Positions 1,751 through 54,056 are shown, counted from the first letter of the stretch. The stretch: 64,000 nucleotides of DNA from Lytechinus pictus (GCF_037042905.1 NC_087252.1:11904001-11968000); one strand, 5' to 3'. Program-made: numbers and translations. Notes: generated by a model from the sequence alone, not told the origin.

Positions 1751-1849
1751 ATATCCGAAAAAGAAACTTTCAACAATAAGGTACACTTTCATTTAAAAAA
1801 AAAATCCATGAATTACTAAGAAGTATTTCAAGACAGGTCAATTTAGTGA

Positions 1850-5766: not shown

Positions 5767-8700
5767 TTAATTGAAATTATATGTGAAAAGCAGCCCGGAG
5801 ATGAATCCTGGTTGCCAGGCAACGACGAGAGCTGAAGATGTCGTCTGGTTTTGATGGATGATGAGTGGAGAAGGTGAATCTGGTGTGGCTTTGAATATGC
5901 CGAGGAAAAACGAAAAACTTTATCATTATTTCAATACCTGTAAGGATCCTTTTGTTATTGTAGCTATTTTGTTTAGTTCTTTGTTTATGTTTCCGATCCT
6001 TTAACATGTAAAAATTGTGGCATATTACCGATTGCTGTTGTATGATGTTATCTTAGGTTACACGTAGCATATCATTCAGCTGTGAACATTTGTGCCATTG
6101 ATATTAGTCTTTGAAGTAGGCCCGATTATTTTTTAATACATACGCACGCGTAGCACATTCAAACTTACTGGGAGTGGAGGGGTTGAAGACCACGCTGCCT
6201 TCACCGTATCTTGATTTAGCAGTGCAGCGGTAAATACATGGATATTCAGGAACTGGGGTTTGAATTGCCAGTTTTGAAGAGCTCAGGGGTCCGCGTTCTG
6301 GTGAGGTGTCGGTGAGCGAGGTGCGACCGGTAACGTTTAAAATCAGAGTTTCGTTGCAGAGCCATTCGAAGGCAATGACGAGGGGATTTGCATCTGCTGT
6401 ACATATCAACAAGAATCCAGCAGTCCCGCTTGTTTCTTTCGTTGTAAGACGTCGAAGAGCAATAGACACAATGGGGTGATCTAGAATGAAAAAGGTATAC
6501 AAGAAAATTGGAAATGAAATAGACGTGAAATATGAGACAGGTTGACAAAAATTGGTTAAGATTGGTGGTAGATAATTTATTTCTTTTTAGAAAGGTTACT
6601 TGGCAAAGCACTTACTCATTGTCATTGTCCCATATTATTTATCCATTATTATATAGCAAAGGAGCATACCAATTTGTTGGCTCAGTTGGCAGCTGCCGGG
6701 ACCACGCTCAATTGGGCATAGTGAATTTTCAGAGGTTTTTCTTTTTCTGATATATGTTTTGAACAATTAAATACGATTTTTTTTTAATGTAAACAATAAT
6801 CTGACGGATTTCAACAGCATATTCATCATGCCGTAGTCTTTACCATTCTTATTCTGACATTGCACTTACACGATATGGTCAGGACCGTACTGTCATTCAC
6901 AAAACGAGGAAATGGTACTCCAGGTTGAACAGCCACACAGATAAGACACTTTCCATGATCGGATCTCTTGGGAGTGAAGAAAAGTGTACTTTCAGCATCA
7001 TAGATATCAGCTCTGGTTTTACTTATCCGCAGGGATGAGTTAGACGTCACATTGGTTGATCCTAGGTACCAGTGAACGAGGGGGGCCGGGTTCCCATTAA
7101 ACACTCTGCAGGTTACGTTGGTCTCTGCTCCTTCAAAGATACCGTCTTCTGGGAGAGCTATTCCGATCTCGTCTGGTGGTCCTTCAAAGAAACATAAAGC
7201 AGACGATTATCATAGTAAAATTGAAAGCTAAATATTAGATATAGCATCAAAGCATAGCCCGTCCAGTGTTATTTGCGCACCGTTGTAGTCTTAGATGACG
7301 TCAAATCACCAATAGTGAGGCGTCGAATCACCATGATCACCAATAATGACGATATGGATTCAATATAACTATGAATATTATAACGAATACAGTAGCAAGC
7401 TAGTTGTAATTATGTGTATTTTGTAGTAAAAATATATGGTTCATTCTATTCTGAGTAAGCATTATTATTTATCATTAACGTTCTACACACAGAAAAAATT
7501 GTTAATACAACGTTTAAGGAATAAAATCTCACCAAGAACAACAAGTCTAGCTACGCACGGCTTAATAAAGACGCCCTCTATAGATGGGTAGCATACAATG
7601 TGCATTCCATGGTTCTTTTTATCTGGATGTATAGTTATGGTACTTTCAGTGTCAAACAAAGTTCCGTCTAAAACACTGCGAGTCGTTGAAAGGTTTGCGT
7701 AAATTTGAGTATCGTCACCACCGCCATATAACCAGAATGACAGTTCAGTTGCCGGGAATGATCCAATACTTTTACATGTGATTGAAGTCGGTGAATTTTC
7801 ATGAACGTATAGGACGGTTGAATGGGACTGGTAACCTCCAGATTGAAAGAGCAGCACACTTGTAGGCAGAACTCCAAAAAGAAAATAAAAATAAAAAGAG
7901 AGATAAACAGGAAGGAATATGTAAATTAGTTATCCATGCACTAGCGAATGCCAAATCATTATAAACTTAAAATGCCTTTTCATTGGACATTATCATAATG
8001 CTTTACCCTAATTTTCACGTTAAAATGATATATAGAGATGATATACCTATTAACTTACTGATATTCCCTGAAAAATATAACAAAGAGAAAATCCATACCA
8101 TGAACAATGAGATGAACTGAGCATAGAAGTTTATTTTGTAGTCCTGGGTGTGACGCGATGCAGTTAAGAATCGTTTCGTGGTCTTCCCTGGAGGGTGTGA
8201 TAGTCACCGCTTTTCGGGAGATGTAAAATCCGCCTTGAAGAGCATCCGACTGATCCTGATGAACAACAGCCATATCATCTGGTAAACGCCATTTCAGTAG
8301 TGCAGGAGGCATTGCTCCATATACTTCACATGTGATGTTGTATTGATCTCCAGCTATGACAGTCACTGAAAGGTTATTGAAGCAGTAGCGGATCCCCGTG
8401 TCATCAATAATAACGATCACATTCGGTGGATCTGATGATAGAAGTAATGAATACACTCAATATTTTTATTTTAATGAATGCCTTTGTACTTTTCATATTA
8501 ATGATGTACCTCACTAGAATAAAACCTTTTAGTTATTTTTTTTTATAATAACATAGGCCTAACGTAGAACAATCACGTTCAACGTACTCAAAACATAATG
8601 GTTTACAAGGATTAAAAATGGTAGTGGTATTTGACATTTAGAGCTACTTGGATATTTTTTTCATTTTCATTTTAATGTTGAACCTAGTTAGAATAGAATC

Positions 8701-9783
8701 AGTTAAAAATCGATATAACGTACATGTAGACCTGACATAGGACCATATAATGTTTGACAAGCTCAAAACATAATGCCTTACAAGGGTTGAACATTTTACG
8801 TTTATGATATATGAGGTATATGAGCCACCCTACGACAGCGACTGTTAAGTTCGCAACCAAATGCCACTTGCGGTCATTTGGATACCTAGTGTAAAATATT
8901 GTCAGATTATATTTATTTTCGCTACACATATCTATTATGAACTACATGTATGGTTTTGATGTCAAATCGAATGTATATAGCTCCACATTTTTTTCCCCAA
9001 TATCTATTGCTCATGCCGCTATCCGTAATCATTTCTGGTGAGATTTTTTTACTTGTTAGACATTCCATGAAAACATCTGCTGATAAGCAGAAAGGCAAAA
9101 AAAATTATGTCAGACGTAGAATAAGAAAATACAATTGCATAAATCAGCTTTCAATACTTATTTTGCGACTAGCAATGTGAAGGCGACCAATTTGAAAGAA
9201 ATAAATACAAGTATTTTGTCCGCAATGGTAATGATGAGGGTTTTCCGTGTAGTTTATTTACATGAACTTTAATACAACAATAATTTTGGTTTTGTTGTTT
9301 GTTCTTACGAAAATAAAATACTATACTTCACTAGGATTCTCTTTCAGCAATATGCTAATATCAATAGGGGCAATATACATGTACATATAAAACATATACA
9401 AAATTGGTAAAAAAATATATATATATTTTTTTTGTAAACATACGTTAATGACATTGTCATGATAATCGTAAAGTGTCCGAGCCACAGTTTCCAAATTTTT
9501 GGAACTATATTATAATATTTACGGCGAAATTGTGATTTTATTCCTTAATTAGCATTATCAATCAGTTAAAGATAAATTTTGATAATTGGTAAAATTGAAA
9601 ATAAACAAGTTTAAATATAAACCATTCGAACGGCTCACATAATATATCACCCTTAAATATCCATCGTCTTAATTCGCTACGATAAACTTACTAGTATAAT
9701 GCAAATACAACTAAAGACTTACTGCTTGGTGAGATGATTACACACAGTGATAAAACAAGAATTGTTTGAATATAGATGGCCAT
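5767..9783 (-). CDS. Unit I: predicted secreted IgSF protein, SP-C2-C2-C2-I-FN3 stub, ~492 aa (nephrin-like Ig domains)
   Basis: complement(join(9723..9783 MAIYIQTILVLSLCVIISPS, 8099..8431, 7533..7871, 6870..7181, 6169..6480, 5767..5888 ...VVAWQPGFISGLLFTYNFN*)). All introns GT-AG, phase 1; frame open; Ig Cys pairs present. Confidence 0.85.
8782..9079 (-). pseudogene. Possible decayed V-set exon in intron 1 of unit I
   Basis: CAG acceptor at ~9080. Fragments GKNVEL, KYNL...ANLTV and a terminal FNP+T|GTAAAG mirror intact V exons (GENITL, KYSL...GNLTI, VLNP+G|GTAA). Contains stops and frameshifts. Confidence 0.4.
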
Positions 9784-10876
9784 CGTCGTCCAGATATTAC
9801 AAATATGGAAATACCATAAAGTCTTACTGAAGTCTTAGACATTTTACACGGTGGTCAATTATCATTGCAAGTAGATCATCAGTCCATGATCTAATAAGAA
9901 CTATACCGTTTTGAAAAGCTACATACATGTATGGCACTTTGTTGTATCATCTCCTACTTCGATACACGGATTCGGTTTCACATACTTCAAACATCCATCA
10001 CTATGACAGGTATAGGTCTAATGCAATCATGTTGATATTTTGTTTTATCTTTATTTTTTTTGTAAAGTGGGCGCTCTTCCTGCAGAAAATGTGATTAACC
10101 TAAAAGTGGAAATTTAGTATAAGCATATTGAAGCCTACTAATGTAATAACAAAATTCAGGTATAGTACAATTCAACCAATCTGTCTTGTTATTGAACTAA
10201 TGATTTTTTAATGTTCAAACAATGAATTAATACTGGTGGTTTAAGCAGTAATTTGGATAATGGGAATCAAAATTCATACCCCTCAGTTTATTCCACGCTA
10301 TGCCACATTTTTCAGTTTAAATTTTTTTCGCAAATACTGGAGAACTAGTTATTGGATCGCCCAACGTAACAAAAGAGGTCATCAATCAAAATAGGTATGG
10401 CGTTCCCCCATGATTTTCGGGGGGGGGGGGGGGTGGGAAGCAAACAATAATAGTAACAAATGTTTATTTTTTTATATGCAGCAAAAGTTTCGAATTTTAC
10501 CCTTTTCGCTTTCATTGAATTTCTTTACTTTCAATATTTTTTCATCTCCATTCAAAAAATCATTGTCAATTCATTTATTGATTAATTTACTCATTTTTCT
10601 GAGGAGGCAGCCCCGATATCTTTAGCTCTCTCACAAACACGCGCGCATACACGCGCGCACACAATATATAATCTGCACGTCAGGGCCGCTCGATTACATA
10701 GCGATATATCATTTATATAACATAATTACAGAATAGACATTAATTAAAAGTTGTGTTGAATATTAAATATGAAATAACTAATCCACCGAATGTATCTGAA
10801 AACATCGCATTTCCGAGTGTTTATACTGTATAAAGAAATGAAATGTGCGATGGGTTATCTTATCTACAATAAAATT

Positions 10877-13800
10877 CTACATTTTACCGATTTCATGTTT
10901 GTTGATCACATTGTCGATACTTTCTGATTGATACTTTTGTCCAATGATGAATCCTAGCTGCCAGGCAACGAAAAGAGATGAAGATCTCGTCTGGTGTTGG
11001 TAGATGATGAAGACAGAAGGTGGATTCGGGATAACATCTGTAAAAAAAAGATAACATAAACTGTAAATATAAATTTAAGAGGAAATGTTATGAGTATCAC
11101 TGAAATGTCAAAATTAATACTTTTATAATGTTCTGTGTTAAAGCATTATTGATAGGATTACGTGAATATATGGATAATTTTGAGACAATTTTTTAAACAA
11201 TATTTACCCATTTATATTTATTCAGTTCAAAATGAACATAGCAAATTCAATTATTTTACATTGTGGAGGATTCATTAAAAGCCACAGTCTTAAACAATTA
11301 TGATTCTTCCGGTGTAAAAAATATAAAGACAACATCAATTATGTAATAAAAGTTATACAATGTGTTTAGAAATATTTTGATGACATCACTTTATTTGTTA
11401 ATTATCAGACAAACAGAAAATAACCGTTAAACGTACACGAATAAAGGGAATCGAAGGTTGCACTTCCCGAGCCGTATTCTGATTCAGCGGTGCAGTTAAA
11501 AACACAATGATTTTTCGAGAGTTGGTTTTGAATCGCAAATACGCTGGACCTTAGTGTTGCATCTTCAGATATAGTCTGGGGGAGAGTAATGTTATTGGTG
11601 TCCCAGGGCACTACAGTCTCGTTGCAAAGCCAAACGAAGGTATTGACAGGAGGATTGGCGTCCGCTTCACATATCAACACGAGCTCAGTAGTCCCACTTG
11701 CTTTGTGTGAGGTAAGACGTCGAGCAGTGATTGACACAGCAGGATTATCTACATTACAGATACAAAATACAAATTTGCTATAAGTTAATATGAAATGGGA
11801 GAGGCATAAGGTCTGGCAGAGACAAATTATCAAATTTGTTTAGGAAGAAGCAAAGCAGGAAACAAAACATGCAATCATTTTGTAAAAATGTCATTTTGAA
11901 AATTTGTCTCATCGCGACCTTTATCATGTTTATAGTCTCTGAAGGTTAAAAGAAACTTAAAATGCTAAAGTTTTCTTGTACAATATTGTCAATCTTATGA
12001 ACAGACAAGCAAAACAAGAACAAAAAATAGCAACGAGTCAACTTGGTAAACGTGTAAACAGACCGGATCAGTTAGAAATCAAAAGGCTTCCCTTTCTATA
12101 AAACCAGCTTAGTAGTCTTATCAAAAGCATTGCAAGAAACGGTACTTACATGTTACGTTCAGAACCAAGCTTTGATTCACTGAACGTGTAGGTTGAACTG
12201 CCAGGCAGAGAAGACGTTTCCCATGGTCAAACCTCGTCGGTATTAGAGTCAGAGTGCTTTCAGTGTCATATCGACCGGCATTATTTTCACTTATTTTTAA
12301 AGATGAATCCTCTGTAAGATTTCTTGACCCGATGTACCAATGGATATGCGGTGCAGGGTATCCATTAAGAGATCTGCAGGTTACATTTATTTCTATGCCA
12401 TCGTATAGGTCCACAGTAGAGCTCATAATTACGCGTTCTGGTGGGCCTTTAGACGAAACATAAATCGATAAACATTTTTAAATGCCTTGAATATAGGATA
12501 TAAATTTCAGTTCAAAGTCAACCTGCTTAATGTATTATGTAATTTGTAAAAAGGGTTAAAAAACTCCTCTTGCAAACCTTCCCTTTTTTTTAGATTACGT
12601 GAAATTATCAATATTAGCGATGACGAATTGGCCCTTTTAGCAAGGAAAAATGTAAGAAATGTTAAACCACACAGAACTATTAAGAATATGTGTTATCATG
12701 TAAATCATGGCAGTTGGATCACGACTATTAAAGCAATGAATTGATTTTTTTTGTTTGAATAAACATGTCCTTTCAAAAATTAGTAACCGAAAGGGAAGAA
12801 GAAGAATACCTCACCGTAAACGATCACTGTGGCGGACGTAAATCCGACTACGTGTTTTTCAAGTGATGCGTAGCATTGAACGGTCTTCCCATGATGTTTA
12901 ATATTTGGATGTATTGTTACAGTGCTCTCGGTGTCAAACAAAGCATCGTCTAAAACATTCCTTTTGATTGAGGAATTTTCATGGATGGGGATTCTGTCAG
13001 TATGACCAGTACCACTTGTCAACTGAAATGATAGTTTGGTCGCTGGGAATGACCGAATACTTTTACAAGTAATTGAAGTCGGTGAATCTTCTTGAACGTT
13101 AAGTACGGTTGAATTGGACTGGTTTCCTCCAGTTCGAAAGAGCACCACATCCCTTGGCAGAACTTAAAATAAAAACAAAAGGAGACATTTTGAGTGAGTG
13201 AGAGAGATAGAGAGCTAAGGAGGGGGGGGGGGGTATTATGGATGGCATCGAATTTAAACTTTGGTAAATGATATTGAGGAGACTGAAGAGATATGTTTTA
13301 TGTTTTATTACATACATGATATATTTTTTTATGTATATTCTGTCGACATAAAAGTGAAATGATAGCGTAAATCCATCTGCGAAGGAATAACATCGCTTAC
13401 AAATTTTTAAAGGTAAAATATTACAGAGGCGGCAATAAAAGGCTCACTAAAGACTGATACTGACATTTTGAAACAGAAATGACCTGTATTGCATACATAC
13501 CATGAACATTGAGATGAACTGAGCGTAGACGTTCATTTTTTAGTTCTGGGTGTGACGTGATGCAGCTAAGAATCTTTCCGTGGTCATTCATGGAGGGTGT
13601 GATGGCTACCGCTTTTCGGGAGATGTAAGATCCGCCTTGAAGAGCTTCCGACTGATCCTGGTGAACAACAGCCATATCATCCGGTACATGCCATTCCAAC
13701 ACTGCATGGGGATTTGCTCCGTATGCTTCACATGTGATGTCATGCTGTTGACCAGCTATTACCGTTACAGAGAGGTTGTTAAAGGAATAACGGACCCCTG

Positions 13801-14223
13801 TTCCATCAATGATGTAGATCCAAGTGGGTGGAGCTAGCGATAAAAAAATAAGATGTTTTCAGCAGTAAAGTCAGTTGATAAATATATTTTTCTTTCAATT
13901 TCAAAATAATTTTACGTGTTATGATGTAAACTATGGAACATATTTGGAACATCAAGATATTCTCCCTTAATGTTATGATTTCGTTTAAATAGTGGATTCT
14001 CTCTCTAATTGCGTAGGCCCTACATATTTCGATTATCACTAATCGTTAATTGGTTCATACACAGTGTTCATGCCAATTCATACGATCAGTATCTATTTGC
14101 TATGCAAACCTTCTCATCATGCTTTGATGAATCAAATGCAACATATGACTACTTACCGCTTTGTGAGATGATAACCCCAAGGAAAAGTTGAAGAGCTACT
14201 TGTCTAGAAATGGACATTGTCAT
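10877..14223 (-). CDS. Unit H: predicted secreted IgSF protein, SP-C2-C2-C2-I-FN3 stub, ~505 aa
   Basis: complement(join(14157..14223 MTMSISRQVALQLFLGVIISQS, 13501..13833, 12815..13162, 12150..12446, 11437..11748, 10877..11037 ...FVAWQLGFIIG...KM*)). GT-AG, all phase 1, open frame. Confidence 0.85.
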
Positions 14224-14991: not shown

Positions 14992-17900
14992 TTACCACGC
15001 AACGAACAGAGATGAAGATCTTGTCTGGTTTTGGTACAGGGTGAACCCAGAAGGTGGATTCAGGATAAAATCTGTAAAAAATAGAAGATGATATAAACAG
15101 TAAACATAAATCTAACATGGTACGTTTATAAATATAAATGAAATAGTAAATCAATTGGTAGGATAGCATGAATATTTCATTTTCAAACAAAATTAATTTG
15201 TATTAATTTATTTATTCCTTTTTATTTATTTATTCAATTTAGGATAAAACATATCAAATTCAACTATTTACAGTGTGGAGGAGTCATTAAAAGCCACATG
15301 CATAAAAAAGATGATTCTTCTAGTATAAAAATATGAAAACATCAACTATGTAACAAAAAATGCATAGAGTGATTAAAAGTTTTTTGATGACGTTATTTTA
15401 ATTGTTATTTGATTATTAGAAAAGAAACAAAAGGTAAACGTACACGAATTCAGGGAATCGAAGTTTGCACTTCCCGACCCATATGCTGATACTGCGGTGC
15501 ATTTATAAACAGAATGGTATTTGGAGAGTGGGTTTTGAATCTCAAGTACGCTGGACCTTAGTGTTGCATCTTCATATATAGTCTCAAGGAGTGTGATGTT
15601 ATTGGTGTCATTGGACACTATAGTTTTGTTGCAAAGCCAAACGAAAGTAATGACAGGAGGATTTGCGTCCGCTTTACATATCAACACGAGCTCAGTAGTC
15701 CCATTTGCTTTGTTTGATGTAAGACGTCGAACAGTGATTGACAAAACGGGATGATCTACATTACAGATTCAAAATAAAAATTCGCTATAAGTTGATATAA
15801 AAAGGGAGAGGCATAATGATTAGCAGAGACAGTCGGTTTTGAAAAACTCGGAAGAGGAAACAAAACACTGTCCAACTATTTTGCTAAAATGAGGAAGCAG
15901 TGCCATTTTTTCTCATTGCAGCCTTCGTCATGTTTCTAGTCTGTGAATGTAAGAAAGAAATTTAAAAGGCTCAAGTTTTCTTTTAAAATTTTGTCACAAA
16001 ATCTAAAAAACAAGCGAGCAGGACAAGCAGAAAAAAAAATTGTAATAGCAAATGAGTCAACGAGGAAAACATGCAAACAAACAAGATGAGTTAGAATTAA
16101 AAAAGCTTTCCTATCTGTCCAACCTGCCCAATAGTCTTATCAACAGCATTACAAAAATCAGTACTTACATGTTATATTCAGAACCAAGCTTTGATTCACC
16201 GATCGAGCTGGGAGTGTTGTAGGTTGAACTGCCTCACAGAAAAGATGTTTTCCATGATCAAACCTCGTCGGTATTAGAGTCAGAGTGCTTTCAGCATCGT
16301 ATCGACCAGCTTTATTTTCACTTATGTTTAAAAATGAATCCTCTGTAAGATTTCTTGATCCGATGAACCAATGGATATGCGGTGCAGGGTATCCATTAAC
16401 AGATTTGCAGGTTGCATTTATTTCTATGCCCTCGTATAGGTCCACAGGGGAAATAATTTTGATCCCTTTTGGTAGGCCTTTGAACAAAACGTAAAAATAA
16501 TATTCATATAAAAATGCCCTAAGATGAATAATGAAATTTTGTTTTTAATATAACCTACTTAACATCCTAATGATTTATATAATTGATGAAAGAGATGAAA
16601 GACACCTCTTGCATTCTCTATTTTCTTAGAATATGTAAATTCCCTAATAAAGTGATGATGCCGTGGCCCTTTTCAGCCTTGGATTTTGTAAGAAATCCAA
16701 AACAATACACAACTATAGAGAATATACTTTATCATGTAAATGATGACGATTATTATCAAATAAAACTTAATAGGACAATAGATTGAACTACATTATTATT
16801 TATTTCTGGAAAAATACTAACCAAAAGGAATATTAAGACAAACTCACCGTAAACGATCAATTTGGCAAACCCTACGTCGAATCTGGATCCTTCAAGTATT
16901 GCGTAGCATTTAATGTACTTCTCATGATGCTCAATATTTGGGCGTATGGGTAAGGTGGCTTCGGTGTCAAACAAAGTATCGTCTAGAACACTTATTTTGC
17001 TTGAGGCATTTTCATGGATGAGGATATTGCCAGCATGACCAGCACTACCTGCTAACTGAAATGATAGTTTGGTAGCTGGGAATGACTCAATGCTTTTACA
17101 AGTGATATAAGTCGGTGAATCTTCTTGAACGTGTAGGAGTTTTGATTGTGAATGGTTACCTCCAGTTGGAAAGAGCAGTACGTCCCTTGGCAGAACTTCA
17201 AATTAAAAGAGAAAGAGACATATTGAGTGAGTAAAATGAGGAACTAAACTGACAGGGATGATTATGGATGGTACTGAATTAGCACTTTGATAAATGATAT
17301 TGAGGAGACTGAAAGCTTTTAGCACATACATGACATACTTTCCTGTATACGCATGTTATGTGGACAAGAAAGTAAAATGCACATATAATGTAAATCCATC
17401 TGCAAAGGAATAGATTCGCTCAGACATTTGGTTATTTTATACATTACAGTGGAGGCAATAAAAGGCTCTCAAAAGACTAAGAATGACATCTACAAACAAA
17501 AATAACCTCTATGACATACACACCGTAAACATTGAGATGAACTGAGCACCGAGGTTCATACTGTAGTTCTTGGTGTGATGCAGTGCAGCTAAGAATCTTT
17601 CCGTGGTCGTTCCTGGAGGGTGTGATTGTCACAGCTTTCCGAGAGATGTAAGATCCGTCTTCAATAACATCAAACTGATCATGTAAATATATCTCTGTAT
17701 CACCAGGTATTTGCCATGTAAGTACTGCAGGGGGCCTTGCACCATGTGCTTCACATGTGATCTCATTTTTCTTCCCAGCAGTTAAAGAAAGGTTGTTAGA
17801 ACAATAGTGTAGGATTCCCTTTCCATCCGTGATTGAAATTATGCTGGGTGGAGCTGGTGATATAATGAAATAATCAGTGTAAATAGTCAATCACGTTTTT

Positions 17901-18188
17901 GTCAGTTCATGTCATACATAATAATCTATTCGAAATGGAATTTATTATGAAGTTTTGAAAGTCTCTGAAAAAATTATGATGTCACTTGAATTATTATTTT
18001 TTTTATCTTTCAACAAATTAAAGATTTCGATGGGTAATAATCATAGGTCCGTATACGACAGATCGCCAGTATCTATTTACTACAAACTACTCTTAATGAA
18101 AGAAATTACACAACGCTTCATACTTACAGCTTTTTGAGATGGTAATAACGAATAGAACAAGAGGTACTTGCACAGAAATGGACGCCAT
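14992..18188 (-). CDS. Unit G: predicted secreted IgSF protein, SP-C2-C2-C2-I-FN3 stub, ~479 aa
   Basis: complement(join(18128..18188 MASISVQVPLVLFVITISKS, 17524..17853, 16848..17195, 16169..16477, 15444..15755, 14992..15071 ...LFVAW*)). GT-AG, phase 1, open frame; closest paralog of H, including introns. Confidence 0.85.
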
Positions 18189-19943: not shown

Positions 19944-19978
<35 letters not shown>

Positions 19979-40546: not shown

Positions 40547-43357
40547 CTGCAAGATAAAAACAGTGGATCGGAATAATTATCAGGATCACGTAAAATCCGA
40601 TAAAATGATGCACCCATATAGGGATTTATGTTTGCTTTGCTATAATTGAGATGTCATTAAAATTGCAAAATATATACAGAGTACGGGAGATAAAAAAAAA
40701 GTCAAGTGAAGCACTGAGATGGTCACTTGTTTAAGTTTTCTCTTAAATTTTACATATCCAATGTAGTTCTATGAAGAATAGCATGGATATATATCATAGG
40801 GCTGCAAGGTTGGATTACTAGTTGAGAGTGAGTTCTGATATACTGATATAACCTAGGGCAATGGTATTATTTAAGGGTCAAAATAAGTGACATGAATCGA
40901 ACTGCATGCAAAGTAAGCATAATTGTAGAGAGGAAAAAGATCAAAATGGGTGTGTCTCATTCTCATTACCCGGAAAGTTCTCAGCCCTGAATCATCTTTA
41001 ACAAGATTGTATGCTATATCAATATTTGCTAAAAACTTACCAAACGAAATGGCAAGGCTCAGTAATAGACAAATCTCTTCAAGAATTACCTCCATTGCTC
41101 AGCAAAACACAACGAGAGATTGAGAAGAAGGATCACTGCTTTGAAAAATGGCCAATAATTTATTGCACGGGGAAAGAATATTTAGGAGAATTCATAATTT
41201 TGATTCAGTTTCAGAACCTCATAAAGACATTAATTTTAAATGAAATGATACGTAAGGTGGTGATTCGGAATAAGAGGGCGCTCTTCAGGCCTGGGGCTTT
41301 AATCGTGGTAAAGTGTGATTCGATTATATCTCTGGATCCACCTGTGTGTATTTGGTCTACAGACAATGTTTTATCAAATCACAATTGGTCTAGAATTGAA
41401 TTGAAGAAGTGTTATATTCGGTTTTATACAACAATAAATCTTCATAATCTATGGTTTGCTTTAACACCCGCCCTTCCCCCTCCCCCAAAAATAATTCTTA
41501 TCATTATTATAATTCTAATTCTTCTTAATTTCCATAATGAATTCTTGAATATCGCCTTGAACACACTGCAAAGTAAATTTAAGTCCAATTTATTCATCTA
41601 TTTATCCATATATTACTACAATTCACTAAAAACAATTCATTATTGAATTAAAAAAAAAAAATAATAAATATATATATATATATATATATATATCGCTTTA
41701 TTATGTGCAGCTTCCATTTTACATGTTTTTTTTTCAGAAAATGCAATAAAAATATTCTTTATTAATGTTTTTTCCCGAGAAATGATTGATATCACGCGGT
41801 CATGAAGTGTTTTCCAAAAATGATAAAATGTCTAACTTAATCCTCCCACCCCCCCCCAAAAAAAAAACGACTTTCAACATAAGCACTGACAACGATTTCA
41901 AATAATGAACAAAGGTTTAGTGCATAATGATAATAATTGGCTGTAATCTAGCTTTTTATCAATCTACGACTGCTCAAAGCTCTTCACAATTATTATATTA
42001 CCCGGTCGGTGGATTCATAGCCTTTTAGCAGCCTGTTAGGCAGGATCGATTTTAGACTAGAATTTTCAGGGGGGGGGGTGGGACTTCTGGGGGCTTTAGA
42101 AATGTTCGACGTTGGTTTATTCAATACAATGAACATTACCTACTGTGGTTATCCTTATACTGACCAGCAGCTTGCCCCAATCCCCCTGAAAATTCATATC
42201 ATGCGAGGGAGCGTATAGCGCCGGGGAAAACACACACACACACATAAATTTTTTTTTAGAATGGTTATGACTTTTTCAAGTATAATATGCATCAGGGCCT
42301 GATGGTGTTATACATGTAGATGTAGATGAGAGCATTTAACGATAAAGGGGGGGGGGGGGGGTGGTTATCAGAAAATGGGTTTGTGTTGTTCGATGGACAT
42401 GGGTCGACACTCCTGATCTAAATTCCAAATCTAAAAGCGACATTGGCAGAGGCTTAACAGGGGTCGGTGGACAGGGGGGGGGGGGGGGCAAGAGCCCCCA
42501 AAATCCCGGTAATATCATGGTATGAACAGGCATAATAGTGTAATGAGGCGACTTTAAAAAAGAATTGCGAGCAAGCAAACATTTTGACCTTTTTAATACA
42601 AAAATCAAATTTTGCGATAGATTTTGACATGATATCCAGAAAATATTAATTTTACTCTTTTGTCTTTAGATTCCTTTTTGTGTGGTCTGTACGCCACTGT
42701 GAACAGGATTCTTTGCGGCAGTAACGTGAAGATTAAAAAAGAATAAAAAACGAGGGGCGCAGTATAGCACATGTGCTAGAAGGCTGCTTTATATAAGTCC
42801 CGAGCGAGAGAAGCGAGCGAGAAAAATCAGTGTATTATTGTCATTAAATTCAGTAAATAAAATCATATCATACACTTTTCCTTTGCTTTTCTTTCCTCCT
42901 ATTTTTTCTTTTTTGTAGAATTTTTTGGAGCCATGGCTTAACCCTTCCATACGCAGTGCTGTGCGGTTGGGGTCCGGGGCGGAGCCCCCGGAACTTCTTA
43001 ATATCAAAGCCATATTAAACCTCGCAGATTTCCGCTATTTTAATCAAATCGCGGGCATATACAGAATATAGCTTTTACACAACACATTCATTCAACCCAG
43101 TTGCGTAATGAACCAAATATTTTGAGGGGGCAAAACATAGCAATGTGGGAAAAATTGAAAAAAGACGCCAGCGTGCAAAGTGAGCTGGAAAAAAGAAATT
43201 TCCTGTTGGAATTAAATTCTAATTATGTGATAGATTGTTTACATTGTTTTCAGCAAAAAAATTCATTGTTTCCATTCATATCATTATACGTTGTCTCCTA
43301 CAATTTATTTCATTTCCTCTTGGGTGTGGAACCAAGACCACCCTACCCCCCAACCTA

Positions 43358-43536
43358 ACTGGGCGTTGTGGCGTGCGCCTGTAATCCAAGCTATGCGGGG
43401 AAGTTACAAATTGATGCAGAGGTTCGAGCCCTGGTCACGTCTTTCGGATGGTGACGTTAAAGGTCGGTCCCAGACGTAAATAATCATATCTGATTGATAC
43501 ACGTCTGACAAAACTCAAATACACACACACACACAC
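43358..43536 (+). mobile_element. SINE-like element with a 7SL/Alu-domain-like head, B box, Deu-domain-like core and (CA)n tail
   Basis: ACTGGGCGTTGTGGCGTGCGCCTGTAATCCAAGCTA resembles the 7SL/Alu 5' end; GGTTCGAGCC at 43421-43430; GTCTTTCGGATGGTGACGTTAAAGGTCGGTCCC core; CA tail. Confidence 0.65.
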
Positions 43537-44939: not shown

Positions 44940-47603
44940 ACTTATAGGGTTAAAATTGATATTAAGAATGAAGTACAGGTTCAGGGTGTCTTTGATGACG
45001 AGTGATGTTGAGTTCAGTATACCATTCATGAACCAGGTTACTGAGGCTTACTGGTCTATATACTGTCTGATCTACATGTGAGAACGGCATCAACTGTCGG
45101 ATATTTAATGCATGACGGATGAGGAGTCAACAATATTATTACGGGAGAGTCTAAAATCGGGAGGAAAAGAAAAATCAGAAGAAAACCGTTTTTTAAGATA
45201 TGATTTTGCTTATTAGCGCTAAAGAAAAACAAACTTGCTAGAGATGTATAATGCTATTAATTTTTGTTTTCATAGTAATCTTATACAAAAGGGAACATAG
45301 TCTTATTCAGCATTATTATTGTGGGGCAGAAATGGGGAAAAGGCAGTCTCCAACTGATAATATTACCAGAACGCTCGGCACATTAACATAGAAAATGCAT
45401 GGGAAAATACTACAAAAAATTATTATAATTTTCACTTCGATACCAATAGTTTTTTAATGAAAAATATTGGGTTTACTGTGAGATATTCAGAAGGTAAGTG
45501 AGGACACCCTTTAAAGTTATTAGGTGTATGCATTGGTATGACCCATGAACATGATGAAGCCGGGGAAATGGATCATGCGCATCTCATGCATTTTCAATGT
45601 TGTACATCCACCAATTGGAGATTGTTGCTACTTTTGAATTTGTATACAACCAATCGGAGATAATTGCCACGTTGATTGTTTATAAATCAACAAATTGGAG
45701 ATGATTGCCAATTTAAATTTTGTATATCAACCGATTGGCGATGATTGCCACTTTGAATTTTGTATACCTACCGATTGGCGATGATTGCCTCTTTGAATTG
45801 TGTATATCAACCGATTGAAGGTGATTGCAAGTTTGCATGTTGTATATCAACCACTCGGTAATGGTAACCAGCCCCAACCCCCCCCCCTGCTCGTGACCAA
45901 AAAAAAAAAATAATAATAATAATAAATCTCAACGCTGATTCCTCTGATATGAGTTTCAAGTACTCATCTTCTAAATTTTGAAGGTCCTATCACTACCTAT
46001 CAACAATTTAATAACCATAAAATCACCACCACAAGGCCCCTCATACCCATACTTACAACGACCATAAAGCATAACCGATGAATTGATATCGTGATCAAGC
46101 TCCCGGTGTGAAGCGAAACAATGTAAACTTTTCCATCATCATTCATTGATGGGGTAACAAATACGCCTCTATTAGATGTGTATGCTGCAACATGGACAGA
46201 ATTGAACATATTGAAGGATCGTTAACTCTCCAGGATTTGGCCAGTGCATGCAGTGTTGCAGGAGGCCTGATATCCCGAACAGTTCAACTTATTTTGTGGG
46301 TTTGAACCAAAGCGATTCGTTTTGACTCCCCGTTGTAGTCAGTTTGAGATTGATTGTCAGAAATAGACAAAGTTCTTGGTTTAGCTAGAAGTGAATGAAA
46401 ACAGAAAATATTGACTTTTAGACTAAATGTCCATTAGTGGTCATCTCGTAGGCCTATTTATCTCCAGTGTTTAAAAACATCAAATAACCTAACAACATAT
46501 ACCTGTACAATTTTTGAATCATACTTTTAGTTGTGACTGTGAACATAATAGATGAACAAAAATAGCAGCTCGACCTCGAATTGCTATTCGGTTACGTGGT
46601 TGGCTTTAAATAGAAGTAAAATTTTGAATGATCTATTAAAGATTCTGATCTTTTGATTACAGCTTAAAGTCAACCGATTGAAAAAAAAAAATCAGCAACT
46701 CTCTGTAAGATAGAGCCTTGCTTAGCGGATGGCACTGCTTTTTTGCCCTCTTTATTCGAATATTACATGTTATATTGATTTTGCATCAAAGATACATCAT
46801 CATGTAGTCGTCATGGAATTGAACACATAATAAATTACGGTAGAATCTTTAGAATTGGACCCGTTATGGAATTCAAGTTGTGTCGTGGGAGAAGCTTCCT
46901 TGCCTCTTTCTCACCCTTCGATTTCCGTCTATGCCACACCACACCGTCACTTCACTGGTCGCGTGCTGAGCAGTAGGGGGCAGTAGGACTCTTTTGCCCA
47001 ACGCAATCGTGTTTTACGTACTGTCTCATTGCTTCTCATGTCTACGACTGTTTTTTTATATAGATTATATGTATAGTCATATTCACGTGCGTATTTCTTA
47101 TACTAATTTCCATTGGAAATCTTATGCATATTCTGCACCATCGACGAATACACATTGAAATTGAATTGCATTGGTTTACATTGAATTGAATTAAGAATTA
47201 AATTCTTAATTTACCTGGTAAGAGGACTTCCAAAGCGACTGAACTTCCTTCGATTTAACAATTCAATTTCAATTTCAATTTATTGAACAGATGTGCCTAA
47301 GGAGCAATATAAACCTCTGTCTTCCTATTGCGTACCATGAATAGAAAGGTTGTTGCTTTGTTCGTTTCTGGTTTCCATACCTTTATCAGTAAAGCATCTC
47401 CATACGTTTCTGATATAACCAAGTTAACACACGATTAGTAGATGGTGGGTTAAATGTACAAACAAGGGTAATATCACCTCTCCACCCCTAACGACTGGGT
47501 GGATATCAGGGTTTTGCAGACAGGTAGACACATTCATCCCATGTATCTAAGAAGCTAGGAAGACGATGAAGGTTACAATCAGAAGAGCGAAGCCAAAATT
47601 CAT
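44940..47603 (-). pseudogene. Unit B: pseudogenised duplicate of unit A ([SP+V]-C2a-I)
   Basis: Exons ~47215..47603, 46057..46384 and ~44940..45150 align to unit A exons. Splice sites are retained, but there are frameshifts, an internal deletion and a (CAATTT)n insertion in V. Confidence 0.88.
45596..45870. repeat. 40-bp minisatellite, ~7 copies
   Basis: Units like TGTATATCAACCGATTGGCGATGATTGCCACTTTGAATTT starting at ~45601, 45641, 45681, 45721, 45761, 45801 and 45841. Confidence 0.9.
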
Positions 47604-50229
47604 ACTGCCTGTACTCTTAGAAAAACAGGCGCAAATAGGAACCCCCGAGAAAGAAGATTTTCTTTACGTTTCCTTTATAAGAAATTTAAATGGTTGTATA
47701 AATAACCTAAAAGGCTCCAAGGTTGCTGTTTTAGAACCTTTTACGTAACTTTTTGAGGGTCGAGCATAGAACCCTCGAAGAAAACCTTTTCTAATAGAGT
47801 GCGGTTATGGGTTCTTCTTCTTGGTTTCAAGCAGTTTACCGATATATCTAGAGAAGATGTTCAAAGAGGAAGCAGTTTATTGCATTTTAATGATACAACT
47901 AATACAGATGTAAACGTTGTGGGTTATTTTGTCACAGCGAAAATGAAAGTTATTATTGTCTATTAAGAGGTGATTGATGGTGTTGTCCATAAATTTTTCG
48001 TGACATTATTATCTCGCACATGTCAAATAATATGTATTGATATAGCCCTACCGTATTAAATTAAATTTCTATCAACATTTCTTTAATTTCCATAGTGACA
48101 AGAGAGAAAGAGATAATACAATCATTACTTTAAATATGTATGTTTCAGCCGCGGATCAATGAACTTTATGAAGGGGATTCATATTGTACCAAAATTTTAA
48201 TAATTTAATAAAAAGAAGAATTGTATGAAAATTATTGTTTTTCATTTGATTATTCATAACTCCAAAGAGAGATTGCATATGATAAATTATAATTTCTAAT
48301 GTAAGAAATGACAAGTTCAAATTAGACTAGGATATTCTGGAATGTCTCAATTTCGTTATGTTGTCTTGTCTTTCTGTTTATTCTCACAATGAAAGTTTTA
48401 ATTATCATGGTAAAGTTGAAAAAAGTTGACTGGTTTGCGATGTCTTACTGCGCTGTTGACACAATGTTTTTTATTTAATATTTTGAAAGAAATTTAGCCT
48501 TTTGGCTACTATTAATACTCAATCATTAATTTTGGTTAAGTTTGCCACTGCATTTGTTTTTCATTACTTTGTTTTATGCTACAATTGAATTCAAGTCTAA
48601 ATTTTGTAAATCTGTAATACATTTGTCACATTGCTTGTGTATACTTTTTAATTTAGAGAAAAGTGGAGACGAGTGAGGACAGTCAAGTGGCTCAATTTTT
48701 TCTTCTAAAACAAAACAATCTCCGCCGCCAATCATACTCTACAGGACCTGATGTGGCTGGAAAACATTATGGCGTATCGGATGATTTGAATTCAACTTAA
48801 TCTAGAGATACATGTACTCACTTACAGTACAAATTGATGGTCAGTGGTAACACAACCAAATATATCTAAGAAATAAGAGACCTGTTCCTGTTACGGAACC
48901 CGTTGCATGCTGCGTCTATTCTATCCTATCTCGAATGATAGATAGAACCGTCGCAACTTCCAATCTGACTACCATTGTCTTCAAGATAAATGTAACTTTT
49001 TTTTATTAAATAAGCGTAATATATCCCTTAACTTGTGAAAGATCGAGAAGGGTCCGTTCCTAATTCTGCAATATACTGACACGCCGCCTTATTCAAATGG
49101 CGAAAACTTAAGAAAATAATTATGTAGACTGAAGTTGTTCTAGAGTTCTAAAAGTGGATCAAAAACTGAGATATCAAATAGCAATCCACATTTATCCTGG
49201 AATCATCCAATATTTTTTTTAGAGAGGTAGACGGGGGGGGGGGGGGAAATCATGTTTGTGGTTGTTTGCATGTCTCTACAAATATACATGTAATTAAAAT
49301 TGAATAACGAAAAACCTGGTTTTGACTTCTATCACTTCGCATTGTATGTTTATGTAGTAGTTGTAGTACTTTATTCTTTATTGAAAATCACACCCTTGAC
49401 TTCACAAAGCTGTCAGTACTCGCAACATAAGCCAAAGGTTTAATATGAGTACATTGTAGCTTTACATCAAACTCTCTTACTCTATAACACCAGTTTTCAA
49501 TTCCATTATTTGCCAAGTAACTTAGACCAAACAAAGAGTTTACTTGGATAGCGCACATAATTGACTTTACGAAAAGTACTCCTCAACCTTGCTACAGTTG
49601 TTTTTTTTTTGGTGATAAAAAGGGGGATCCCAACCCATTTCACCCATAACATCATTTTTAGGTGTGTATTTACCACCCCCTCCACAAATAAAACCTAAAC
49701 GCTGAGAAAAATCCACTGTTGATAGAAGAAAACTCCTCTGTGCTCCAAAGATTACTTGCATATACAGTCAAACAATAAACCGAACCACCCAAATGTTTAA
49801 AAATACCGATAATAAGACTCAAAACTCGGGAAGCTAATTAAGCCAGCATTTTGGTACACTTTTGAAACATAAAAAAAGATCGTCAACCAAATACCAAAGT
49901 ATTTGTATGAATCAACAATATGTATGTATATTTACCATTTTAATAGCATATTCTGCTGGAATTTCCAGCAATATCGGCCGTATTATCTGTTCTAGAGGTG
50001 GTTTCTGAATATTTGTAGGCCTATATACATATTTTTCTCAAATCAATTGTACAGTACAAATTATTCATAAAATATATTCTGACCCCCTTGAATCATCGCC
50101 CTCCTTTCCTTCATGAACCAGCAAAACAGGCAAATGGAAAGCGTCTTCCTCAACGTTTTATGATGGACGTTTATTCGACAAAATCTGCGCTTGACAGGTT
50201 GTCAGATCTGACATTTCTGACATCTTGTC

Positions 50230-51217: not shown

Positions 51218-53395
51218 CATTGTGATTTGACTTGCATTTTCAAAAAACTTTGTGCGTTGTAGATAGCGGTTCCGGAGTAAATGCGGAAGGTCTCTATTAG
51301 GAATGAAGTAGGAGGTTTAGGGTGTTTTTGATGACGAGTGCTGTTCTTGTGTTTAGTACCATTCCAGAGCCAGGTTATCGATGCTATTGGTCTACTATCT
51401 GATCTACATGTGAGAATGGCGTCAACTTTTGGTCTGATATTGAATACACGACGAACTGAGAAATCCACGATGACAGGAGAGTCTATAATCGGGATGAAAA
51501 TAAAATTCAAAAGAAAGACATTTTCCACAAATGAAATTTTGCTGATTGGCACTATAAGAACGAAAAATAATGCTTGAAATTAATTATTCTTAATTTTCTT
51601 TCATATTACTCATGAACATACATCACAAGGAAAAAAGTAATTGTGAGATTTATTCAGCATTATCATTTTGGGGTGGTAGGGGGGGGGGGTGTCAGGCTCG
51701 GAAAGCTGACACAGAGAACGCTTGGAAAAATAATATTTAAAATGATGATAAAGTTTCACTTCGATATCAAGATTTTTATTAATTATGAGCCATTAAGAAG
51801 TTAAGTGTAGACAATAATCAGCGTGATTAGGCAATGCATTAATATGAGCCGGGATGCCAGGGAAATGGATCATGCCCATCACATTAATTTTCAATTTTGT
51901 ATATCAACCAATTGGTGATGATCGCCCCCCCCCCCCTGGACGTGAACAAATATCTATATAAAAAACACGCACCTGTCCATATGTGATGTTTGAAATATTA
52001 ATCATATTATCGATTTTTAAAGACATTATCACTGTACCCAACAAGTGAAATCTTCATTAAAATCACCGCACCTAGGCCCATTACTGGTAATCCCAATACT
52101 TACATTGAACAGAAAGTCGAACGGTTGAATTCATATCGTGATCAAGCTCCCGATGTGAAGCGATACAACGTAAAATCTTCCCATCATCATGCCTTGATGG
52201 GGTAACAAATACGGTTCTAATAGATGTGTAGGTGACACCATGGATGGTATTATACTGATCATCTTGACGAATCCTTGCCCATCCAGGATTTATCCATTGC
52301 AGTGTAGCAGGTGGTCTGATCTCTTGAACAACACAAAGTATTGTGTGGGTTTGCCCCAACGTGATGCTTATTGACTCCCCGTTGTGATCGGTTTCAGATT
52401 GATTGTCAGAAATAGACAAAGATCTCGGTCTAGCTAGAAGTAATTAAAACAGATTATTGACTTTTAATCGGATCGAACGGTTCATTAATATCCATGAACG
52501 TGGTCATCACATAGTTCTTTTTTTAATCTACTGTATTCGAAAATTATGAAGTATCTAACAACACATACCTGTAAAAACTATTTGATCATGCCTCAGTTGT
52601 GACCATCAACAAGTTTTGGGCGATTTAAGTTTCCATTCTCTTAATTACATCTTAGAATCAAGCTCATGCAGTTTTATTCAAATATTCAGCAGTTACATGT
52701 ACGATGGGACCATGGTATGTAAATGAAAATGTTATCATGGTTACACAATCTTAATTGGGACCTTTTCTTCGAATGTACACGTTCTGTAGATTTTTTGCAT
52801 CAAATATACATTAAAATAACTAATAAAGGTATTGAATATATAAACATTTTTTCTTAATTCTATCAGAAAAAGTATACAAAATCCATAAAAATACAATTAC
52901 AATAAACAATTAAAGTATACTAAACAATAATAATAATAAGCCGCTTTTATATTGTTCTTAGTGCATCGAAACGACGCGTCAAAGCGCTTTACAGATATAT
53001 CTTTACCCTGGTCATCAGATCAATCAGTCATTCCTGTACACAATGTATGCACATCTTTCACTCCCTGGGGAGTATTCTAGTCAGTCGTCAGTGAGATGCA
53101 CACAGTACTTGGCAAACTAAAATGACTTTTACACCCTACCGGGTACCCATTTAGCAACTGGGTCGAGAGTAGCAAAGTGTAGATTAACGCTTTGCCAAAG
53201 GACGCCAGACCGCGGTTGAATTCGTACACACGACTACCTCACCACGGCTCCTCCACAACAAACAAACATTAAACATAACATATACATATCTTTGTTTTAC
53301 CTTGGAAACTTGGATGGATTATTAACTATTTGTAGCTTTATTCACGTTATGTACTTTTCAAGTTGTATACTGCCTCATTACTTCTTATATAATGC

Positions 53396-53442
<47 letters not shown>

Positions 53443-54056
53443 GGTGTGTGGGTGTGGGTGAGTGTGTGTGTGTGGGTGGGTGTGGGAGTGTGTGTATTTA
53501 TTTCCACTTGTGCAGTTTTCATCTCAATTTCCTTAGGAAATCCCATTTGAGGAAATAAAACCAATATACATATTCTACACCATAGACTAATACAAAGTGA
53601 AATTGAATTGCATTTAATTAAATTGAATTGAATCAAGAATTTACCTGGTAAGAGGGCCTCCAATCTGACTGAACTTCCTTCGACATCTTTAGATATGCGT
53701 ACCGAGCAGATATATAAACCACTGTCATCCTGTTGCAAACCCTGAATAGTAAGGTTTCCGCTTACAGAGTCGGCTATCAAACTGTATTTGGACGTATCTG
53801 AGATGTGTTGTTCATTTTTCGATTTCATGCCATTTTCTTTATCAGTAGCTATTTCCATCACCATACGTTTCTGATATAGCCAGGTTAACACACGATGCGT
53901 AGATAGAGGGTTGAACCTACAAACAAGTGTAATATCATCCCCAACAACTGGAAGAATATCTGGGTTTTGCAGACAGGTAGACACATTCACCCCATGAATC
54001 TTAGAAGCTTGGAAGACGACGAAGGTTACAATCAGAAGAGCGAAGTCAATATTCAT
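51205..54056 (-). CDS. Unit A: IgSF [SP+V]-C2a-partial I, ~339 aa, predicted secreted or incipient pseudogene
   Basis: complement(join(53645..54056 MNIDFALLIVTFVVFQASKIHG...DSGLYIC, 52104..52433, 51205..51482)). GT-AG, phase 1; the last domain lacks its second Cys and the stop lies inside a transposon TIR. Confidence 0.72.
52926..53253 (-). mobile_element. tRNA-derived SINE in unit A intron 1
   Basis: Minus strand starts GGAGGAGCCGTGGTGAGG, has a degenerate B box and a central AAATGGGTACCCGG motif, and ends TGTAAAGCGCTTTG...(TTA)n. Confidence 0.75.

What the first reader, a model, noticed from the sequence alone, without database searches (positions are those of the whole stretch)
5767..54056. 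All exons are phase 1-1: possible combinatorial or 'variable cassette to constant exon' splicing
Seen: every internal exon is a multiple of 3 (294-351 nt) flanked by phase-1 GT/AG sites, so any donor joins any downstream acceptor in frame. The I exons of F, G, H and I keep intact donors. Known: phase-1 symmetry is usual for Ig exons; clustered protocadherins and UGT1A splice promoter-bearing variable cassettes to shared constant exons, and IgH makes secreted versus membrane forms by terminal-exon choice. Inference (unproven): the stubs are secretory terminal exons, and a shared FN3-TM-tail may lie left of this window.
Basis: inference. Interest (0 to 1): 0.72.

Follow-up and report, generated by a model that had tools for sequence, protein, structure and literature searches.

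The report
Tandem secreted Ig-domain genes, sea urchin
This stretch of the painted sea urchin genome holds a row of duplicated nephrin/Kirrel-like immunoglobulin-domain genes, each with its own start exon and most ending in a short leftover of a fibronectin exon. They most likely make separate secreted proteins rather than cassettes spliced to shared constant exons.

Summary
About 30 Ig exons on the minus strand are multiples of 3 (294-363 nt) with phase-1 AG/GT sites, and the I-exon donors at 19468, 15444, 11437 and 6169 are intact. This is inherited Ig-exon design copied by duplication, not an independent signal.

The window is Lytechinus pictus chromosome sequence. It lies inside a cluster of at least 600 kb of nephrin/Kirrel-like IgSF genes.

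- **Separate genes:** units E to J each have their own ATG and signal-peptide exon. RNA contigs join the G leader to G Ig2-Ig3-Ig4-I while unit F has no coverage.
- **In-frame stubs:** each I donor is followed 260-400 nt later by an in-frame acceptor of a truncated FN3 exon (the "stub"), which reaches a stop within 26-50 codons.
- **Annotation agrees:** NCBI models in two Lytechinus species end in these stubs.
- **Selection:** the units are old (dS 0.3-1.4) but constrained (dN/dS 0.3-0.5, no stops).
- **Constant exons:** FN3, TM and Tyr-tail exons do lie left of the window (-18.5 to -38.4 kb). They follow unit J's own leader, V and Ig2, so they are not shown to be shared.

No transcript joins an I donor to them, though this was barely testable. 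A few annotated inter-unit junctions exist; most end the reading frame. Verdict: an ordinary tandem IgSF cluster with secreted truncated copies.

The parts
53645..54056 (-). Unit A: signal peptide plus V-set exon, ATG at 54056, phase-1 donor
   Evidence: ORF and splice scan; Pfam V-set E 2.6e-10
52104..52433 (-). Unit A Ig2 (C2-set) exon, 330 nt, phase 1-1. A degenerate I-type exon follows at 51551-51249.
44977..47618 (-). Unit B: decayed V exon (47618-47186, frame broken) and decayed I-type exon (45154-44977)
   Evidence: tblastn split across frames
37677..41095 (-). Unit C: candidate leader 41095-41041, Ig3 40546-40199, Ig4 38332-38024, FN3 stub 37780-37677 ending in a stop
   Evidence: same layout as L. 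pictus model P0184
33544..37169 (-). Unit D: leader+V 37169-36764, Ig2 36380-36060, Ig3 35190-34852, Ig4 34477-34169, truncated I-type exon 33714-33544
25540..29937 (-). Unit E: leader 29937-29889, V 29230-28880, Ig2 27961-27629, Ig3 27238-26897, Ig4 25871-25578. The NCBI model reads on to a stop at 25540. No I exon and no stub.
   Evidence: NCBI model P0177 maps at 98-100%
19105..23492 (-). Unit F: leader 23492-23444, V 23113-22775, Ig2 21916-21584, Ig3 21251-20910, Ig4 20390-20076, I 19797-19468, FN3 stub 19208-19105 (in frame, stop), AATAAA at 19034
14992..18188 (-). Unit G, no V exon: leader 18188-18128, Ig2 17853-17524, Ig3 17195-16848, Ig4 16477-16169, I 15755-15444, FN3 stub 15071-14992 (TAA directly after Trp)
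   Evidence: Four exon junctions, including leader to Ig2, are seen in spliced RNA contigs of run X1.
10877..14223 (-). Unit H, no V exon: leader 14223-14157, Ig2 13833-13501, Ig3 13162-12815, Ig4 12446-12150, I 11748-11437, FN3 stub 11037-10877. The stub also has a phase-1 donor after 10888.
   Evidence: NCBI model P0152 maps at 100% on all exons
5767..9783 (-). Unit I, no V exon: leader 9783-9723, Ig2 8431-8099, Ig3 7871-7533, Ig4 7181-6870, I 6480-6169, FN3 stub 5888-5767 (stop), AATAAA at 5598
4345..4393 (-). Candidate leader exon of unit J. The rest of J lies left of the window: V -6025..-6372, Ig2 -6962..-7291, broken I about -18006..-18325, FN3 -18493..-18768, FN3-like -20503..-20748, TM -35160..-35351, tail -37940..-38414.

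Best explanation
The region is a tandem array of separate genes in the nephrin/Kirrel-like branch of the immunoglobulin superfamily, in Lytechinus pictus.

**Origin (inferred).** An ancestral receptor gene had the layout leader, V, three CD80-like C2 domains, I-type Ig, FN3, FN3-like, TM, Tyr-rich tail. It was duplicated from upstream of its leader to a point inside the FN3 exon. That produced 3'-truncated copies lying upstream of a full-length copy. Unequal crossing-over then multiplied the truncated copies. Units G, H and I also lost the V exon.

**How each unit works.** Each unit is transcribed from its own promoter and leader exon and is spliced within the unit. The I-exon donor joins the nearby acceptor of the FN3 remnant (the stub). 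There the frame stops after 26-50 codons. The product is a secreted protein of 4 or 5 Ig domains with no membrane anchor.

**Status of each step.**
- Shown: exon structure, leaders, in-frame stubs, within-unit splicing of unit G, and purifying selection.
- Inferred: polyadenylation after the stub, secretion, and the duplication history.

Some transcripts probably read through into the next unit. This is a by-product and usually ends the frame early.
For: - The source names are nephrin-like, syg-2-like and kirre-like. Pfam gives C2-set_2, V-set and Ig_3 on the exons.
- **Own leaders.** Units E to J each have an ATG and signal-peptide exon with a phase-1 donor. The G, H and I leaders are homologous to each other and to L. 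variegatus leaders.
- **RNA.** X1 contigs join G leader (18128) to Ig2 (17853), then Ig3, Ig4 and I. Introns have zero depth, and all unit F exons have zero depth. G is therefore transcribed on its own.
- **Stubs.** All four stubs keep an AG acceptor in phase 1, in frame with the I exon, and stop soon after. Homology to the full FN3 ends at or just after the motif AWQPGF in F, H, I and C. In G a TAA directly after Trp ends the frame there.
- **Stub conservation.** Stub DNA is 76-80% identical to FN3 and to the other stubs. Among the more diverged unit pairs, coding exons are 55-73% identical. In the youngest pair, G-H, they are 74-87%.
- **Annotation.** NCBI models ending in the stub are P0156, P0164 and P0184 (L. 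pictus) and P0002, P0151, P0153, P0154, P0155 and P0162 (L. variegatus). P0152 confirms H I-donor to H stub-acceptor.
- **Selection.** Across 19 exons there are no stops. dN/dS is 0.30-0.50 and dS is 0.34-1.4.
- **Full-length relatives.** Genes with the same FN3, TM and tail flank the array: J on the left and Z on the right. P0205 (936 aa) shows the complete architecture.
Against: - No direct evidence shows polyadenylation after any stub. The three RNA runs of the species itself gave almost no reads on the one stretch I could lay.
- G has no AATAAA or ATTAAA between its stub and the H leader.
- Annotated inter-unit junctions exist:
  - P0152 joins the H stub in frame to unit I's Ig2.
  - L. 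variegatus isoforms X1 and X2 join a stub to the next unit's leader exon or to its Ig2.
- One X1 contig leaves the G stub at a GT (TG|GTAACC) and continues into sequence found only on other chromosomes.
- Unit J has lost Ig3 and Ig4, and its I exon is broken. Its FN3, TM and tail exons therefore look partly orphaned.
Confidence: 0.7

Rival explanations
1. Cassette-to-constant splicing. Promoter-bearing Ig units F to I can skip their stubs and splice the I-exon donor to the single downstream FN3, TM and tail set. This would give membrane receptors with alternative ectodomains, as in clustered protocadherins or UGT1A.
For: - All donors and acceptors are phase 1, so the joins would be in frame.
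- Each unit has its own leader.
- One FN3, TM and tail set lies downstream of about ten units.
- J's own Ig3 and Ig4 are missing and its I exon is broken.
- Read-through into downstream units is annotated in the sister species.
Against: - Every I donor has a closer, conserved, in-frame acceptor, the stub, followed by a stop.
- No model in two species and no RNA contig shows an I donor joined to a distal FN3.
- J has its own leader, V and Ig2 ahead of the FN3.
- The layout is what a partial-gene tandem duplication produces without any special splicing.
- The stubs are as conserved as coding exons. That is unexpected if they are skipped.
Confidence: 0.07
2. Multi-unit (conjoined) genes. Neighbouring units are regularly co-transcribed and spliced in frame into longer proteins. 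An example is H leader, Ig2-Ig4, I and stub joined to unit I's Ig exons, with the stub acting as a 150-nt internal exon.
For: - NCBI model P0152 (LOC135155004) makes this join. It uses a phase-1 donor (ATCG|GTAAAA) at the end of a 150-nt H stub exon.
- Other Gnomon models chain exons of several units: P0157, P0161, P0166, P0171 and P0013.
Against: - The H stub donor is not conserved in G. The L. variegatus stub donor is phase 2 and gives a stop within 8-17 codons.
- P0152 ends by reading into the intron after a single Ig exon of unit I. That looks like a prediction artefact.
- Conserved signal-peptide leaders in G, H and I argue that each is a translation start.
- G is expressed without F in run X1.
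- Gene predictors chain phase-compatible exons easily in tandem arrays.
Confidence: 0.12
3. The truncated units are non-functional relics of partial duplications: transcribed or silent pseudogenes with no protein role.
For: - The species' own RNA-seq runs show almost no reads on F and G.
- Units A, B and D, and J's I exon, are visibly decayed.
- The G stub carries a TAA where the others have Gln.
Against: - Nineteen exons of E to I have no stop despite dS up to 1.4. dN/dS is 0.3-0.5.
- Splice sites, leaders and stub frames are all kept.
- Spliced G transcripts exist.
- Similar intact paralogues exist in L. variegatus.
Confidence: 0.1

Closest known systems
Clustered protocadherin and UGT1A loci (variable first exons spliced to shared constant exons)
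   Same: There is a tandem row of promoter-bearing units upstream of one set of 3' exons encoding FN3, TM and a cytoplasmic tail. Uniform intron phase would allow in-frame joining.
   Different: Here each unit has 5-7 exons and its own in-frame terminal exon with a stop. The downstream 3' exons are preceded by their own leader, V and Ig2. No variable-to-constant transcript was found.
Nephrin / Kirrel (IRRE, SYG-1/SYG-2) IgSF adhesion receptors
   Same: Both have serial CD80-like C2-set Ig domains. The full-length neighbours have FN3, a single TM and a Tyr-rich tail. NCBI's automatic names for the local models are nephrin-like, syg-2-like and kin of IRRE-like 3.
   Different: Units A to I lack FN3, TM and tail, so they would be secreted. 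G, H and I also lack the N-terminal V domain. Orthology to nephrin or Kirrel proper was not tested. The echinoderm KirrelL gene is intronless (PMC8903837) and is a different gene.
Tandem IgSF clusters that contain secreted truncated members, such as CEACAM/PSG or LILR/KIR-type clusters (from general knowledge)
   Same: Expansion is by tandem duplication. Each Ig domain is one phase-1 exon. Membrane-bound and soluble paralogues sit side by side, together with decayed copies.
   Different: This is a different lineage (echinoderm) and a different domain set. Here the secreted form arose from a breakpoint inside the FN3 exon, and that breakpoint was then propagated to several units.
Read-through (conjoined) transcripts between tandem paralogues
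   Same: Annotated L. variegatus isoforms X1 and X2 splice from one unit's stub into the next unit's leader exon or its Ig2.
   Different: Those joins end the frame within 8-17 codons, so they do not make fusion proteins. Only one L. pictus model (P0152) is in frame, and it is unverified.

Membership tests
Variable-cassette-to-constant-exon locus (clustered protocadherin / UGT1A type) | Each variable unit has its own promoter and first exon | tested here: met
   Units E to J have ATG and signal-peptide leader exons. The G leader is joined to Ig2 in RNA contigs while F has zero depth. The promoters themselves are inferred.
Variable-cassette-to-constant-exon locus (clustered protocadherin / UGT1A type) | Variable units have no terminal coding exon of their own; the only in-frame continuation is the constant region | tested here: not met
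   Each I donor is followed 260-400 nt downstream by a conserved phase-1 acceptor (the FN3 stub), in frame, with a stop after 26-50 codons. Annotated models end there.
Variable-cassette-to-constant-exon locus (clustered protocadherin / UGT1A type) | A single set of constant exons sits at the 3' end, with no variable part of its own | tested here: not met
   The FN3, TM and tail exons at -18.5 to -38.4 kb follow J's own leader, V and Ig2. Similar sets recur across the cluster.
Variable-cassette-to-constant-exon locus (clustered protocadherin / UGT1A type) | Transcripts join each variable donor to the first constant acceptor | tested here: inconclusive
   No such joint appeared in the one read-laying allowed (14900-20899). 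F was silent, the G I donor was not covered, and the species' own runs were nearly empty. None of the annotated models retrieved shows it.
Nephrin / Kirrel-like IgSF | Serial CD80-like C2-set Ig domains (PF08205) | tested here: met
   Ig2, Ig3 and Ig4 exons hit C2-set_2 at E 2.5e-6 to 4.3e-10.
Nephrin / Kirrel-like IgSF | Type I membrane protein with TM and a Tyr-containing cytoplasmic tail (and FN3 in nephrin) | tested here: not met
   Units A to I have no TM or tail exon. This feature is present only in the flanking paralogues J and Z and in P0205.
Nephrin / Kirrel-like IgSF | Orthology to nephrin or Kirrel by phylogeny | not tested
   Only the automatic NCBI names were seen.
Dscam-type mutually exclusive exon arrays | Tandem alternatives of one exon inside a single transcription unit, without leaders of their own | tested here: not met
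   The repeated unit is a whole block of leader plus 4-5 Ig exons plus stub, about 4-5.4 kb long.
IgH-type secreted/membrane switch by terminal-exon choice | The same promoter yields both a secretory end and a membrane end | tested here: inconclusive
   The secretory end (stub) is supported. No membrane-end transcript was seen, and the RNA data are too thin to exclude it.

The most novel reading that the evidence does not exclude
The array is a young cassette system in the making. Transcripts starting at upstream leaders read through the weak stub terminators. Because every exon is phase 1-1, they are spliced in frame into downstream units and sometimes on to J's FN3, TM and tail. This would give a combinatorial set of membrane and secreted Ig receptors in an echinoderm.
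Probability: 0.07. Interest if true: 0.75.

Novelty: new member of a known kind. Interest (0 to 1): 0.3.

Why it matters
The evidence points instead to an ordinary outcome of partial-gene tandem duplication: a set of secreted Ig-only paralogues next to full-length receptor genes.

The locus is still useful in three ways:
- It shows cleanly how a breakpoint inside an FN3 exon created a new secretory terminal exon that was then propagated to several units.
- It warns that uniform intron phase lets gene predictors chain exons across tandem units. Several NCBI models here do exactly that.
- It gives echinoderm immunology and adhesion work a defined family of soluble nephrin/Kirrel-like proteins to test.

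Tried and rejected
- **One giant gene.** I first considered that F, G, H and I form one 17-Ig gene, because G, H and I lack V exons. I rejected this after finding conserved signal-peptide leaders in each unit. RNA contigs also start G at its own leader while F is silent.
- **Junction-spanning fragments.** I searched the protein collection for short transcript-derived fragments spanning the H I-stub-Ig2 junctions. Nothing was found, which is not informative.
- **Exact look-up of P0019.** This returned nothing. P0019 is only 72-89% identical to unit F, so it is a paralogue, not F's model.
- **Loose end of the X1 contig.** The contig leaves the G stub. The 30-mer beyond the break matches only two places on other chromosomes, each just after an AG. 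This is unexplained: it could be a chimera, a structural difference or trans-splicing. I did not use it.
- **PolyA signals after stubs.** Signals are present for F, H, I and C and absent for G. In 65% A+T DNA their density is about what chance gives, so I gave them little weight.
- **Literature.** Two searches found no description of this cluster. The echinoderm kirrelL paper concerns an intronless gene.
- **Earlier scan notes.** Nothing bears on this locus.
- **Not attempted.** I did not run structure or complex prediction, since no claim here depends on it.


Full report
**What is there**

The window is G000:C8:11904001-11968000 of an 812-Mb genome. The contig length (42,376,555) equals that recorded for NCBI proteins of Lytechinus pictus. 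The closest database proteins are L. pictus and L. variegatus models named nephrin-like, synaptogenesis protein syg-2-like, kin of IRRE-like 3 or CD22-like.

All features lie on the minus strand. They are built from five exon types:
- a V-set exon;
- three CD80-like C2-set exons (Ig2, Ig3, Ig4);
- an I-type Ig exon (Pfam).

**The observation**

A mechanical scan found a phase-1 AG...GT pair with length divisible by 3 for every Ig segment (294-363 nt). The donors at 19468, 15444, 11437 and 6169 are real GT sites in phase 1.

Independent confirmation comes from two sources:
- Spliced RNA contigs of run X1 give joints 18128|17853, 17524|17195, 16848|16473 and 16169|15755.
- NCBI models P0152 and P0177 map at 98-100% onto the predicted exons of units H and E.

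Its weight is small, because one Ig domain per phase 1-1 exon is the general rule and these exons are copies of one another.

**Each unit is its own gene**

G, H and I have no V exon, so I first suspected one long gene. A search for short ATG plus hydrophobic exons ending in a phase-1 GT found leaders for E (29937-29889), F (23492-23444), G (18188-18128), H (14223-14157), I (9783-9723) and J (4393-4345).

The G, H and I leaders resemble each other and the leaders of L. variegatus models. In run X1 the G leader is joined directly to G Ig2. G introns have zero depth, and every F exon has zero depth while G exons have depth 3.5-8.8. G is therefore transcribed from its own start, not as a continuation of F.

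**The stubs**

After each I exon of F, G, H and I, and after Ig4 of C, lies the first 24-50 codons of an FN3 exon. In each case:
- the AG acceptor is kept in phase 1;
- the stub is in frame with the preceding I exon;
- a stop follows 26-50 codons later.

Homology to the full FN3 ends at or just after the motif AWQPGF in F, H, I and C. In G a TAA directly after Trp ends the frame there. This points to a single breakpoint that was later propagated.

Stub DNA is 76-80% identical to the other stubs and to full FN3 exons. Among the more diverged unit pairs, coding exons are 55-73% identical. In the youngest pair, G-H, they are 74-87%.

NCBI models that contain the I exon end in the stub in both species: P0156, P0164, P0184, P0002, P0151, P0153, P0154, P0155 and P0162. 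P0152 confirms the H I-donor to H stub-acceptor join. None of these products has a TM segment, so they would be secreted.

**Constraint**

Across 19 exons of E to I there is no stop codon. Pairwise dS is 0.34 (G-H), about 1.0 (G or H versus I) and 1.3-1.4 (F versus the rest). dN/dS is 0.30-0.50. These are old duplicates kept under purifying selection, not fresh pseudogenes. By contrast, the I-type exons of A, B, D and J are broken or decayed.

**Left of the window**

I fetched 40 kb to the left and 40 kb to the right. To the left, after J's candidate leader in the window, lie these exons:
- V: -6025..-6372
- Ig2: -6962..-7291
- no Ig3 or Ig4
- I exon with a stop and a frameshift: about -18006..-18325
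- complete FN3: -18493..-18768
- short linker exon
- FN3-like exon: -20503..-20748
- TM exon: -35160..-35351
- Tyr-rich tail, ending in a VxYxxL motif: to about -38414

To the right lies a full-length gene Z with the same 3' exons (V 103705, Ig2, two Ig3, Ig4, FN3 82867, TM 74440, tail 72006). L. variegatus P0205 (936 aa) shows the complete architecture in one protein. At least seven further complete FN3 exons of this type lie between C8:11.70 and 12.33 Mb.

But they belong to a neighbouring paralogue, and such sets recur through the cluster.

**Is anything spliced between units?**

I could lay reads only once, on 14900-20899. The three RNA runs labelled as this species had almost no reads there. 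The informative contigs came from run X1, which carries another organism label and is 93-99% identical. No joint involved 19468, and the G I donor was not covered.

Annotation does contain inter-unit junctions:
- **L. pictus P0152.** It uses a phase-1 donor at the end of a 150-nt H stub exon and joins it in frame to unit I's Ig2. It then reads into the next intron to a stop. The donor is not conserved in G, and the abrupt end suggests a prediction artefact.
- **L. variegatus locus L012.** The stub has a phase-2 donor. Isoform X1 joins it to an acceptor in the 5' UTR of the next unit's leader exon, with a stop two codons before that unit's ATG. Isoform X2 joins it to the next unit's Ig2 out of frame, with a stop after 8 codons.

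These models suggest that read-through into the next unit happens, but that it does not create fusion proteins. Several other Gnomon models chain exons from different units (P0157, P0161, P0166, P0171, P0013). A predictor can do this whenever all exons share one phase.

**Most likely history and mechanism**

A tandem duplication ran from upstream of the leader to the middle of the FN3 exon. It places a truncated copy upstream of the intact gene. Repeated unequal crossing-over then gives n truncated units followed by one full-length gene, which is the layout seen.

Each truncated unit keeps the promoter, the leader and the Ig exons. The FN3 remnant supplies the nearest in-frame acceptor and a stop, making a secreted Ig-only protein.

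- Shown: structure, leaders, frames, within-unit splicing of G, and constraint.
- Inferred: polyadenylation, secretion, and the order of events.

**Verdict**

The stub-as-secretory-exon idea is supported. The shared-constant-exon idea is not supported, but it is not excluded because the RNA evidence is thin. This is a new, automatically annotated but undescribed member of a known kind of locus: a tandem IgSF cluster with soluble truncated paralogues. Two literature searches found no description of it.

Noticed in passing
window 8099-8431 vs 13501-13833 vs 17524-17853: Similarity between units is mosaic. Ig2 of H is closer to Ig2 of I (82% nt) than to G (74%). For Ig3, Ig4 and I, G and H are the closest pair (81-87%) and I is distant (61-66%). 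This suggests gene conversion or recombination between units.
   Followed up: partly
window 14999-15071 (G stub); L010:1502 and L011: One X1 RNA contig follows the G stub up to a GT (TG|GTAACC). It then continues with sequence absent from the 144 kb examined. That sequence is present just after an AG on contigs C3 and C6. It could be a chimera, a structural difference or trans-splicing.
   Followed up: partly
left flank, window coordinates about -18006 to -18325 (L005): The I-type exon of the full-length neighbour J has an in-frame stop and a frameshift, and J has no Ig3 or Ig4 exon. J may be decaying, or it may encode a short V-Ig2-FN3 receptor by exon skipping.
   Followed up: partly
L012:10001-22933 (L. 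variegatus CM031022.1): A near-identical (97-98%) tandem duplicate of a whole leader-to-stub unit lies about 8.6 kb downstream. This shows that the array is still expanding in the sister species.
   Followed up: no
window 1-3000, 58611-62295: Reverse-transcriptase ORFs of LINE-like retrotransposons. The first 1.75 kb of the window has dozens of copies at 81-95% identity across the genome.
   Followed up: no
window 42336-44248, 50658-51225, and the left flank at -13.5 kb and -29.9 kb: A recurrent element with a C/G-rich tract that translates as poly-proline in several frames. An earlier scan note (s1-325047) calls 43358-43536 a 7SL-like SINE. I did not examine it.
   Followed up: no
window 35935-36060 and 53388-53560: CA/TG-type microsatellites directly after the Ig2 donor of D and the V donor of A. 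They translate as His-Thr repeats.
   Followed up: no
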